A stretch of DNA of 63,651 nucleotides, filler included, from Octopus bimaculoides (Eukaryota): NCBI RefSeq assembly GCF_001194135.2. It is 7 parts of 7 records of this genome, joined end to end, with 100 filler letters (N's around TTAATTAATTAA, not from the genome) between each part and the next. Parts side by side here need not be neighbours in the genome. Positions count along the whole stretch, not along the records: positions 29,236 to 54,562 come from NC_068981.1; 6 more parts are not named here. One strand, given 5' to 3'. Positions 50,177 through 50,603 of this stretch are shown here, piece after piece; within the stretch, counting starts at the first letter, position 1; every line of letters begins with the position of its first letter. The notes beneath the pieces are model-generated. The model worked only from the letters and a program-made list of their open reading frames with translations, made no database searches and was not told the DNA's origin. The translations under genes were made by a program, and so were the position numbers.

Positions 50177-50603
50177 ATAAAGTAGTTGTATACTGCCAAC
50201 TTAACGTGACAGTCCCAATAAGGGAATATACTACTGCTATTTAGCCCTAGGAAGCTGGACCGCTTCCTGTCGGCCTTGACACATTTCCTGTGTCCTTATG
50301 TTTGCGAGGGGGAGACAAACTCCTCCACCCAGCCTAGCCTGCATTCAGGGACATGTTTCTGAGTCTTTGCTCATCATCAGCCTGAAGTAGTATGACCAGC
50401 TGGTTGAAGAAGTCTGTCAAACTCTCGTAAACATATATTAGGCTAGGCTGGGTGGAGGAGTTTGTCTCCCCCTCGCAAACATAAGGACACAGGAAATGTG
50501 TCAAGGCCGACTGGAAGCGGTTCAGCTTCCTAGGGCTAAATAGCAGTAGTATATTCCCTTATTGGGACTGTCACGTTAAGTTGGCAGTATACAACTACTT
50601 TAT
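50177..50603. repeat. 164-bp near-perfect inverted repeat with a 99-nt loop
   Basis: 50177-50340 vs 50440-50603; two mismatches seen by eye. Confidence 0.95.
50344..50386 (-). ncRNA. Canonical minimal type I hammerhead ribozyme
   Basis: TTCAGG-CTGATGA-TGAG-CAAAGA-CTCA-GAAA-CATG-T-C-CCTGAA: perfect cores, 6-bp stem I, 4-bp stem II, palindromic ACATGT stem III, GUC triplet. Confidence 0.88.

What the first reader, a model, noticed from the sequence alone, without database searches (positions are those of the whole stretch)
50177..50603. Intact hammerhead ribozyme in the loop of a 164-bp near-perfect hairpin (retrozyme/pLTR-like foldback)
Seen: arms 50177-50340 and 50440-50603 differ at about 2 positions. 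On the minus strand the 99-nt loop holds TTCAGG-CUGAUGA-UGAG/CUCA-GAAA-CAUG-U-C-CCUGAA with every core nucleotide canonical. The inverted arm starts about 9 nt 3' of the predicted cleavage site (between 50350 and 50349), so the duplicated segment is essentially the start of the 3' cleavage product. The arm has further internal hairpins (GACACA/TGTGTC, GTTTG/CAAAC). Established: minimal type I hammerheads with palindromic stem III occur in Penelope-like pLTRs and retrozymes and can act as dimers. Inference: a young, non-coding, self-cleaving retro-RNA family that integrates as fold-backs, and whose transcript would be a long dsRNA with a ribozyme loop.
Basis: partly seen in the sequence, partly recalled or inferred. 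Interest (0 to 1): 0.9.

Follow-up and report, generated by a model that had tools for sequence, protein, structure and literature searches.

The report
Hammerhead ribozyme retroelement inserted head-to-head
An octopus genome segment holds one copy of a small self-cleaving (hammerhead) RNA element joined to an inverted partial copy of itself, most likely an ordinary by-product of how Penelope-type retroelements insert, not a new kind of element.

Summary
Arms 50177-50340 and 50440-50603 are a 164-nt inverted repeat with 2 mismatches and a 99-nt loop. The minus strand of the loop carries a complete type-I hammerhead (50386-50344), with predicted cleavage after C50350.

Corrections:
- The 10.1-11.1 pair is U-A, not the usual G-C.
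- Rfam sees the motif only below threshold (HH9, 24.3 bits against 52).
- The loop is not plain spacer. Its 52 nt upstream of the ribozyme pair imperfectly with the first ~47 nt of the downstream arm, giving a closed, extended helix I.

The piece is octopus DNA. It holds Penelope-like elements (PLEs) with their own minimal hammerheads. Both PLE insertions in the window, and one in Octopus sinensis, are head-to-head pairs of 5'-truncated copies with 3' ends outward. This architecture is already described for PLEs.

I read the finding the same way: a 263-nt forward copy (50439-50177, minus strand) joined to a 164-nt inverted copy (50440-50603, plus strand). PLE-type machinery probably made it from a hammerhead-bearing, probably non-autonomous, retrozyme-like RNA.

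The single ribozyme needs a partner copy to fold actively, so this locus is probably inert.

No other copy of the element could be retrieved, so family boundaries, copy number and activity remain untested. New member of a known kind.

The parts
50177..50603 (.). Whole fold-back unit (427 bp): two copies of the same element joined head-to-head, 3' ends outward. GC is 0.41-0.48 against 0.30-0.33 in the flanks.
50177..50439 (-). Forward copy, 263 nt, sense on the minus strand. Order is 5' closing-stem strand, hammerhead, then 3' domain. Its 5' end is either truncated or the natural end.
50440..50603 (+). Inverted 5'-truncated copy, 164 nt, sense on the plus strand. It equals the 3' domain of the forward copy apart from 2 mismatches. 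It begins 9 nt 3' of the ribozyme's cleavage site.
50344..50386 (-). Type-I hammerhead ribozyme motif: UUCAGG-CUGAUGA-UGAG[CAAAGA]CUCA-GAA-A[CAUG]U-C-CCUGAA. All 13 core positions are canonical. 10.1-11.1 is U-A.
50349..50350 (-). Predicted self-cleavage site, 3' of C17 (C50350).
   Evidence: read from the sequence using hammerhead numbering
50388..50439 (-). 5' strand of an extended, imperfect closing stem of helix I. It pairs with 50293-50340: 31 Watson-Crick and 6 G.U out of 51 aligned positions. The UAC just 5' of helix I matches the HH9 consensus.
50177..50340 (-). 3' domain of the element, 164 nt. Its first ~47 nt form the 3' strand of the closing stem. The rest holds hairpins GACACA/UGUGUC, GGAAGC/GCUUCC and others. 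It folds at -58.6 kcal/mol, z = -3.5.
41003..42200 (.). Context, a different family (called PLE-A here). Head-to-head pair: inverted 3' fragment 41003-41176 (-), 19-nt filler, forward fragment 41196-42200 (+). Minimal hammerheads lie at 41143-41098 (-) and 42105-42150 (+). An approximate target-site duplication CCCAA(A)G flanks the pair.
33594..35418 (.). Context: second PLE-A head-to-head pair, 33594/33654-34806 (-) joined to 34802-35418 (+). It holds the RT fragment ORF 34132-34767 (-) and a decayed minimal hammerhead at 33594-33647.

Best explanation
This is a solitary, probably dead-on-arrival insertion of a small hammerhead-bearing retroelement in an octopus genome. It was laid down as a head-to-head pair of copies by the integration machinery of a Penelope-like element (PLE).

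Proposed mechanism (inferred):
1. The GIY-YIG endonuclease makes a staggered break.
2. Each DNA end primes reverse transcription at the 3' end of an element RNA.
3. The two cDNAs grow towards each other and stop at different points. One is 263 nt and runs through the ribozyme and its 5' closing-stem strand. The other is 164 nt and stops 9 nt short of the ribozyme's cleavage site.
4. The two cDNAs are end-joined without microhomology.

This yields a 164-bp near-perfect inverted repeat whose outer ends are both the element's 3' terminus. The 'loop' is simply the extra 99 nt of the longer copy.

The source RNA (inferred): a non-coding, retrozyme-like dependant of a PLE rather than the PLE's own 3' end. 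Its ribozyme is the canonical metazoan type-I form with a closed, extended helix I, not the minimal form that the PLEs of this window carry.

The ribozyme's helix III is 1 bp plus a palindromic CAUG loop, so it should be active only when paired with a second copy (double hammerhead). There is none at this locus, so the locus is most likely inert.

Shown here: the sequence anatomy, the ribozyme motif and its folds, and the same architecture in PLE copies nearby.

Inferred: the integration mechanism, dependence on PLEs, and inactivity.
For: - The inverted repeat and hammerhead are real and non-random. The Rfam hammerhead clan matches below threshold.
- Host and context: a PLE-type RT ORF has 405 homologues, including Octopus sinensis LOC118763458. 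PLE and SINE copies share 80-87% identity with an O. sinensis chromosome.
- In-window precedent: both PLE-A insertions are head-to-head pairs of 5'-truncated copies with 3' ends outward. One has an inverted fragment of only ~170 nt. One pair is flanked by an approximate target-site duplication, so each pair looks like one event. A third such pair lies in O. sinensis at L002 6887-7089 / 7192-7680.
[quoted passage not shown] Paired minimal hammerheads 100-700 bp apart on opposite strands were seen in Schistosoma (PMC4209133). Animal retrozymes derive from PLE terminal repeats (bioRxiv 10.64898/2026.07.22.740005).
- There is no base-pairing at the inner junction (2 of 12 positions). The new arm is also out of register with the element's own closing stem. 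Both argue for joining of two separate cDNAs rather than snap-back priming.
- The repeat ends sharply and symmetrically, and GC drops from 0.48 to about 0.30 there. This fits both copies ending at one RNA 3' terminus.
- Dimer requirement: monomer catalytic fold -1.7 against MFE -9.7 kcal/mol; double hammerhead -20.0 against dimer MFE -21.8.
Against: - No other copy of this element was found, so its true termini, its PLE partner and its copy number are unknown.
- Any hairpin can formally be read as 'inverted copy plus forward copy', so the geometry alone is not an independent test.
- No convincing target-site duplication. Nothing lies directly at the repeat ends. The best direct repeat in the flanks is 9 nt (TCTAAATCT at 50139 and 50679), reached by 34 of 500 shuffles.
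- No PLE coding sequence adjoins the unit.
- The hammerhead type differs from the minimal type on the window's own PLEs.
- The 99% arm identity could also come from later DNA-level events or from gene conversion.
Confidence: 0.6

Rival explanations
1. Post-insertional DNA event. A solo hammerhead element (the 263-nt copy) inserted normally. Later, a replication template switch or fold-back repair of a break copied its 164-nt 3' domain in inverted orientation next to it.
For: The element carries its own imperfect palindrome, a 148-nt hairpin with z = -4.4 on the minus strand and -4.15 on the plus strand. Such quasi-palindromes are known hotspots for template switching (established knowledge). 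High arm identity fits a recent event.
Against: There is no microhomology at the inner junction. A switch guided by the element's own complementarity would have started copying at arm position ~47, not position 1. The copy also ends exactly where GC and repeat identity drop. That would be a coincidence unless this point is an RNA terminus. The same architecture recurs in unrelated PLE copies.
Confidence: 0.15
2. The fold-back itself is the functional unit of a new non-coding retro-RNA family. Its transcript is a long dsRNA hairpin with a ribozyme in the loop, for example a source of small RNAs or an ADAR substrate.
For: As RNA the 427 nt fold into a 164-bp duplex at -347 kcal/mol. The hammerhead strands stay in the loop. 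The ribozyme core is intact.
Against: There is one locus only and no second copy in the piece. The perfect arm is out of register with, and competes with, the element's own closing stem, which looks accidental. A lone hammerhead of this type is expected to be nearly inactive (PMC4209133, PMC7229834). The architecture is explained by known PLE behaviour (PMC8557442). No evidence of transcription was available.
Confidence: 0.08
3. A non-autonomous DNA transposon (MITE or Foldback-like) with 164-bp terminal inverted repeats that happens to carry a hammerhead inside.
For: It has long terminal inverted repeats, a short total length and no ORF. The repeat ends in A-TA...TA-T, which could hide a TA duplication.
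Against: No unambiguous target-site duplication. The hammerhead with its extended helix I uses one 'terminal repeat' as its 3' closing strand. So the arm is part of an RNA structure, not only a transposase binding end. Hammerheads of this type are tied to retroelements (PMC4209133, PMC7229834).
Confidence: 0.05
4. Assembly artefact: the second arm is a fold-back chimera of a short-read draft assembly.
For: The piece is a draft scaffold with N gaps at 44560-44681 and 51338-51423. PLE tandem and inverted structures are known to trouble short-read assemblies (PMC8557442).
Against: The arms differ at 2 positions. There is a 99-nt unique loop. Both flanks continue into unrelated unique sequence rather than into each other's reverse complement. 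That would need two exact chimeric joins.
Confidence: 0.05

Closest known systems
Head-to-head (inverted 5'-truncated) insertion structures of Penelope-like elements (Evgen'ev & Arkhipova 2005; Craig et al. 2021, PMC8557442)
   Same: Two copies of one retroelement sequence joined 5'-to-5' with 3' ends outward, forming an inverted repeat, with a hammerhead near the 3' end. The same structure occurs in the window's own PLE copies.
   Different: There is no RT/endonuclease ORF, and only 263 + 164 nt are present. The hammerhead is the canonical type-I form, not the minimal PLE form. No tail or target-site duplication could be identified.
Metazoan non-LTR retrozymes (Cervera & de la Pena 2020, PMC7229834; Li et al. 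2026, bioRxiv 10.64898/2026.07.22.740005)
   Same: A small non-coding unit of about 260 nt, within the 150-450 nt range. Moderate to low GC (~0.45). Type-I hammerhead with helix I 6 bp, helix II 4 bp and a short palindromic helix III. The RNA is highly structured. PLEs occur in the same genome.
   Different: There is no tandem direct repeat: one ribozyme and one unit. An inverted partial copy stands in place of a direct one. circRNA is untested. No cephalopod case turned up in the library searched.
Canonical type-I hammerheads of Schistosoma Sm-alpha, newt satellite 2 and the amniote HH9 (Rfam RF02275)
   Same: Core, helix lengths, loop 2 (CAAAGA against CAAAAA) and the UAC 5' of helix I align to the HH9 model. 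A dimer ('double hammerhead') is required because helix III is weak (PMC4209133).
   Different: It scores 24.3 bits, far below the gathering score of 52. Helix III is 1 bp against 3 bp in HH9. 10.1-11.1 is U-A instead of G-C. There is no conserved intronic or satellite context.
Minimal hammerheads of PLE terminal repeats (Cervera & de la Pena 2014, PMC4209133)
   Same: Association with PLE-rich DNA, dimer logic, and occurrence as single motifs from truncated elements or as pairs on opposite strands.
   Different: Minimal hammerheads have a longer helix II, an extra nucleotide between A9 and 10.1, a shorter helix I and little or no helix III. Those features fit the window's PLE-A motifs (41143-41098, 42105-42150), not the finding.

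Membership tests
Hammerhead ribozyme, type I | Conserved core C3 U4 G5 A6 N7 G8 A9 / G12 A13 A14 / A15.1-U16.1 / H17 | tested here: met
   CUGAUGA ... GAA A ... U C read on the minus strand at 50380-50350. Passes the descriptor.
Hammerhead ribozyme, type I | Three helices with paired positions next to the core, and ends in helix I | tested here: met
   Helix I is 6 bp and is closed by a long imperfect stem. Helix II is 4 bp with U10.1-A11.1, which is paired but not the usual G-C. Helix III is A-U plus a CAUG loop.
Hammerhead ribozyme, type I | Reaches the gathering score of an Rfam hammerhead model | tested here: not met
   No hit at the gathering threshold. No hammerhead family at E<=10 on 601 nt. 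HH9 gives 24.3 bits against 52 on 71 nt.
Hammerhead ribozyme, type I | Compensatory changes in the helices among related copies | not testable with these tools
   No other copy could be retrieved.
Hammerhead ribozyme, type I | Site-specific self-cleavage | not testable with these tools
   Folding only: the monomer catalytic fold is disfavoured and the dimer fold is competitive.
Metazoan non-LTR retrozyme | Type-I hammerhead in a non-coding unit of 150-450 bp with low GC | tested here: met
   263-nt unit, no ORF with homologues, GC 0.41-0.48.
Metazoan non-LTR retrozyme | Head-to-tail tandem repeats, at least a dimer, so that two ribozymes flank a unit | tested here: not met
   There is one hammerhead of this kind in 25 kb. 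No direct repeat of the unit was found.
Metazoan non-LTR retrozyme | Expressed as linear and circular RNA | not testable with these tools
   No transcriptome access.
Penelope-like element insertion | Inverted 5'-truncated copy adjoining the main copy, with 3' ends outward | tested here: met
   164-nt inverted copy plus 263-nt forward copy. The same architecture occurs in PLE-A copies. Caveat: any hairpin fits this geometry formally.
Penelope-like element insertion | RT plus GIY-YIG ORF, or sequence identity to a PLE terminal repeat | tested here: not met
   No coding remnant lies in or next to the unit. There is no similarity to the PLE copies of the window or of L001-L004.
Penelope-like element insertion | Target-site duplication and/or a 30-40-bp tail at one end | tested here: inconclusive
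   Only a 9-nt direct repeat, 29 and 75 nt away from the arms, reached by 34 of 500 shuffles.
MITE / Foldback DNA transposon | Terminal inverted repeats directly flanked by a fixed-length target-site duplication | tested here: inconclusive
   Inverted repeats are present. No direct repeat abuts them. A palindromic TA cannot be excluded.

The most novel reading that the evidence does not exclude
The inverted copy begins 9 nt from the ribozyme's cleavage site because its template was an RNA already self-cleaved in vivo. On this reading the locus is a genomic footprint of hammerhead cleavage in the octopus germ line. It would also show that PLE machinery reverse-transcribes the 3' cleavage product. 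If transcribed, the resulting 164-bp perfect hairpin with a ribozyme in its loop would be a ready substrate for Dicer or ADAR in an animal known for heavy RNA editing.
Probability: 0.1. Interest if true: 0.6.

Novelty: new member of a known kind. Interest (0 to 1): 0.3.

Why it matters
Hammerhead-bearing retroelements (PLEs and retrozymes) are numerous in many animal genomes. A search of the paper library for 'hammerhead ribozyme' plus 'octopus' found no report of one in a cephalopod.

This locus shows that octopus DNA holds both hammerhead forms within 10 kb. One is the minimal PLE form. The other is a canonical type-I form with a closed, extended helix I.

It also gives a compact example of the head-to-head insertion scar of PLE-type integration applied to a non-coding passenger. 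That fits the recent proposal that animal retrozymes are PLE dependants.

If a genome-wide survey showed that 5' ends of such copies cluster at the cleavage site, it would give indirect in vivo evidence for ribozyme activity. As a single locus it is of modest interest.

Tried and rejected
Searches that found nothing or added nothing:
1. Rfam at gathering threshold on the whole piece: nothing. At E<=10 on 601 nt: only chance snoRNA, miRNA and lncRNA hits.
2. Other copies inside the piece, by BLAST of 50001-50800 against the piece: only the element itself.
3. Other copies through the protein database, using stop-free translations of the element. A 74-aa frame gave no candidates. Four other frames joined together gave 12 candidates, none scoring E<=10.
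4. Exact look-up of 10 window ORFs, to find the source assembly or an independent assembly: none on record.
5. Pattern scans. CTGATGATGAGN{4,8}CTCAGAAACATGTC and CTGATGANNNNCAAAGANNNNGAAACATGTC in JGI metagenomes gave 0 and 0. The second pattern in IMG/VR also gave 0.
6. Loci fetched through PLE proteins. L002 is from O. sinensis. L001, L003 and L004 come from ENA sample ERZ21867824, a different organism that shares only PLE coding similarity of about 69%. None holds the element, and the strict descriptor, run on L001 and L002 only, found no hammerhead there.
7. Host gene for an orthologous 'empty site': stop-free segments of 42.3-54.5 kb look like transposase debris only, so this was not pursued.
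8. Pfam GIY-YIG on PLE-A fragments: not detected. BLASTP against a weak GIY-YIG ORF of L001 was not significant. The endonuclease motif in PLE-A is therefore recognised by eye only.

Ideas considered and dropped:
9. Strand of selection from wobble pairs in the closing stem: 6 G.U against 3 A.C, not decisive. Both strands fold about equally well.
10. Snap-back self-priming is rejected. There is no pairing at the junction, and the new arm is out of register with the element's own stem.
11. A link between the finding and the neighbouring inverted repeat with telomere-like repeats was considered. On the ribozyme's strand the repeats read (TTAGGG)n and lie upstream. That is the wrong side and polarity for an Athena-type telomere-attaching PLE (PMC8557442).
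12. tRNA or SINE origin: ARAGORN found nothing.

Full report
**What is there**

The piece (29236-54562) is 36% GC eukaryotic draft sequence with two N gaps.

At 50177-50340 and 50440-50603 lies a 164-nt inverted repeat with 99 nt between the arms. I counted exactly two mismatches, at 50258/50522 and 50268/50512. Complementarity ends abruptly at both the outer and inner edges.

The minus strand of the loop reads UAC-UUCAGG-CUGAUGA-UGAG-CAAAGA-CUCA-GAA-A-CAUG-U-C-CCUGAA-UGC, followed directly by the arm. In hammerhead numbering:
- helix I is 6 bp (50386-50381 with 50349-50344);
- the core C3-A9 is canonical;
- helix II is 4 bp with a 6-nt loop;
- G12-A14 are canonical;
- helix III is reduced to A15.1-U16.1 closing a palindromic CAUG;
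- C17 is at 50350, so cleavage would fall between 50350 and 50349, 9 nt before the arm.

**Is it more than chance?**

A descriptor scan required helix I, CUGANGA, a paired helix II, GAAA, U-H and the helix I partner. It finds this motif as the only one with a 6-bp helix I in the piece. It found none in 300 Markov-shuffled pieces.

Rfam is less generous:
- nothing reaches a gathering score;
- no hammerhead family appears at E<=10 on 601 nt;
- on the 71 nt around the motif, Hammerhead_HH9 (RF02275) aligns at 24.3 bits against a gathering score of 52, E = 1.4e-4.

That alignment covers helix I, the core, helix II, loop 2 (CAAAGA against CAAAAA) and the UAC 5' of helix I. The short helix III costs most of the score.

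A paired 10.1-11.1 still meets published acceptance criteria (PMC3088659).

**A feature inside the 'loop'**

The 52 nt upstream of the ribozyme (50439-50388) are not filler. They are an imperfect complement of the first ~47 nt of the downstream arm, with 31 Watson-Crick and 6 G.U out of 51 aligned positions.

The 148 nt from 50439 to 50292 fold into one long hairpin with the hammerhead at its tip. Helices I and II appear in the minimum-energy structure, at -55.6 kcal/mol and z = -4.4. The opposite strand folds almost as well (z = -4.15), so the wobble pairs do not settle which strand is selected.

The element therefore has a closed, extended helix I with an internal loop. Published type-I hammerhead descriptions likewise include a loop 1 and a closing stem on helix I (PMC4209133).

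The rest of the arm is also strongly structured (z = -3.5).

It follows that the perfect arm 50440-603 is an extra copy. It lies out of register with the native stem. On the plus strand, 50393-50439 and 50440-50486 read as a diverged tandem duplicate.

**Would the ribozyme work?**

With ViennaRNA:
- the catalytic fold of one 43-nt motif is -1.7 kcal/mol, against -9.7 for its best alternative fold;
- the 'double hammerhead' is -20.0, against a dimer optimum of -21.8. In it two copies pair their ACAUGU segments into a 6-bp helix III.

This is the behaviour described for newt, viroid and most metazoan type-I hammerheads. Single motifs cleave poorly and tandem dimers cleave well (PMC4209133, PMC7229834, PMC6155905, PMC6765202).

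This locus has one ribozyme only, so self-cleavage here is doubtful unless transcripts of other copies pair with it.

**Where are we?**

ORF 34132-34767 (-) is a reverse-transcriptase fragment (YVDD; Pfam RVT_1, weak). It has 405 database relatives, including Octopus sinensis LOC118763458 at 70% identity.

The O. sinensis locus L002 shares this element, and SINE-like repeats, with the piece at 80-87% nucleotide identity. The window is therefore an octopus genome. The species is not determined.

Downstream of the RT the element has CVYSIPCSCGRLYKGET...EEHRKA. I recognise this by eye as the GIY-YIG motif of Penelope-like elements (PLEs). Pfam did not detect it.

Its 3' region carries hammerheads of the minimal PLE type: helix I 5 bp, an extra A between A9 and 10.1, and helix II 5 bp. 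They lie at 42105-42150 (+) and 41143-41098 (-). The expectation is 0.003 such hits per shuffled piece (features as in PMC4209133). I call this family PLE-A. It has no sequence similarity to the finding.

**The key comparison**

Both PLE-A insertions in the window are head-to-head pairs of 5'-truncated copies with their 3' ends outward:
- 33594/33654-34806 (-) joined to 34802-35418 (+);
- 41003-41176 (-), a 19-nt filler, then 41196-42200 (+).

The second pair is flanked by an approximate target-site duplication, CCCAA(A)G. So the pair looks like one event.

O. sinensis has a third case, L002 6887-7089 inverted plus 7192-7680 forward.

[quoted passage not shown] Paired minimal hammerheads 100-700 bp apart on opposite strands were noted in Schistosoma (PMC4209133).

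The finding has the same layout at smaller scale: a 263-nt forward copy (minus strand) and a 164-nt inverted copy (plus strand). Both end at the same nucleotide, where GC falls from 0.48 to about 0.30.

**Mechanism I favour (inferred)**

Two cDNAs are primed from the two ends of one endonuclease break on the 3' ends of element RNAs. They extend to different lengths and are end-joined.

Snap-back self-priming is unlikely for two reasons:
- the inner junction has no complementarity (2 of 12 positions);
- pairing through the element's own stem would have started the copy at arm position ~47, not position 1.

An assembly fold-back is unlikely. The arms differ at two sites, the loop is unique, and the two flanks are unrelated unique sequence.

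**What kind of element?**

It is not a retrozyme by definition. There is no tandem direct repeat and only one ribozyme (definition in PMC7229834).

It is not demonstrably a PLE end. No coding remnant adjoins it, and it has no similarity to the PLEs at hand.

Its ribozyme is the canonical type-I form that Cervera and de la Pena assign to retrozymes rather than to PLE terminal repeats (PMC4209133, PMC7229834). Recent work derives animal retrozymes from PLE terminal repeats (bioRxiv 10.64898/2026.07.22.740005).

I therefore call it a solitary copy of a retrozyme-like, PLE-dependent element.

**Limits**

I could not obtain a second copy of the element. These attempts all came back empty:
- protein-word searches with its translations;
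- exact ORF look-ups;
- two metagenome scans and one viral scan;
- four fetched loci.

So several things are untested: the family's termini, copy number and age; covariation in the helices; the PLE partner; and transcription.

No convincing target-site duplication was found.

The 9-nt gap between the cleavage site and the start of the inverted copy may be a trace of a cleaved template, or it may be coincidence. Truncation points in the PLE-A pairs vary widely.

**Verdict**

This is a new member of a known kind, and the locus is probably inert. Interest is modest. It would rise if a genome-wide survey showed 5' ends clustering at the cleavage site, or expression of the hairpin.

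Noticed in passing
window 33594-35418 and 41003-42200: Two insertions of a Penelope-like element (RT fragment ORF 34132-34767 on the minus strand; GIY-YIG-like motif recognised by eye). Each is a head-to-head pair of 5'-truncated copies. Arm identities are about 83% and 94%. The second pair is flanked by an approximate CCCAA(A)G duplication.
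   Followed up: yes
window 42105-42150 (+), 41143-41098 (-), 33594-33647: Minimal PLE-type hammerhead motifs: helix I 5 bp, an extra A between A9 and 10.1, helix II 5 bp. They lie near the 3' ends of those PLE copies. The third is decayed.
   Followed up: partly
window 50899-51177 / 51555-51833: A second inverted repeat (279 nt, 92%) only 295 bp from the finding. Its interior holds a poly-C run, the N gap 51338-51423 and a degenerate (TAACCC)n array at 51444-51511. The 99-aa ORF inside it has no Pfam match. It is an unidentified element, possibly another head-to-head or terminal-inverted-repeat element.
   Followed up: partly
L002 6887-7089 and 7192-7680 (Octopus sinensis CM016859.1): A third head-to-head pair of the same PLE family in another octopus genome. 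A ~200-nt inverted 3' fragment sits next to a ~490-nt forward 3' fragment.
   Followed up: partly
window 35490-35804 (+), 52284-52445 (+), 46501-46698 (-), 49168-49422 (+): Stop-free stretches that look like DNA-transposase debris: mariner/Tc1-like C-terminus and 'QDGAPCH', a hAT-like C-terminus, and a DDE 'LLMFDNVPGH'. They were recognised by eye only. No host gene is evident in 42-54.5 kb.
   Followed up: no
window 37551-37726, 40453-40628, 42991-43111, 45526-45654, 47336-47408: Several copies, in both orientations, of a SINE-like repeat (~75-88% alike). It is also present several times in the O. sinensis locus L002.
   Followed up: no
window 29238-30131, 31280-31700, 33330-33440: Dense compound microsatellites: (TA)n, (CA)n, TATCTGTG-type units and (GAT)n. 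They include an inverted pair, 29240-29372 / 29999-30131. PLE copies abut such tracts, in line with the microsatellite insertion bias reported for some PLEs.
   Followed up: no
window 50237-50344 (-): A 35-codon ORF starts at the AUG formed by CCUGA-AUG-C, directly after the predicted cleavage site. It has no database relatives and is probably chance.
   Followed up: partly
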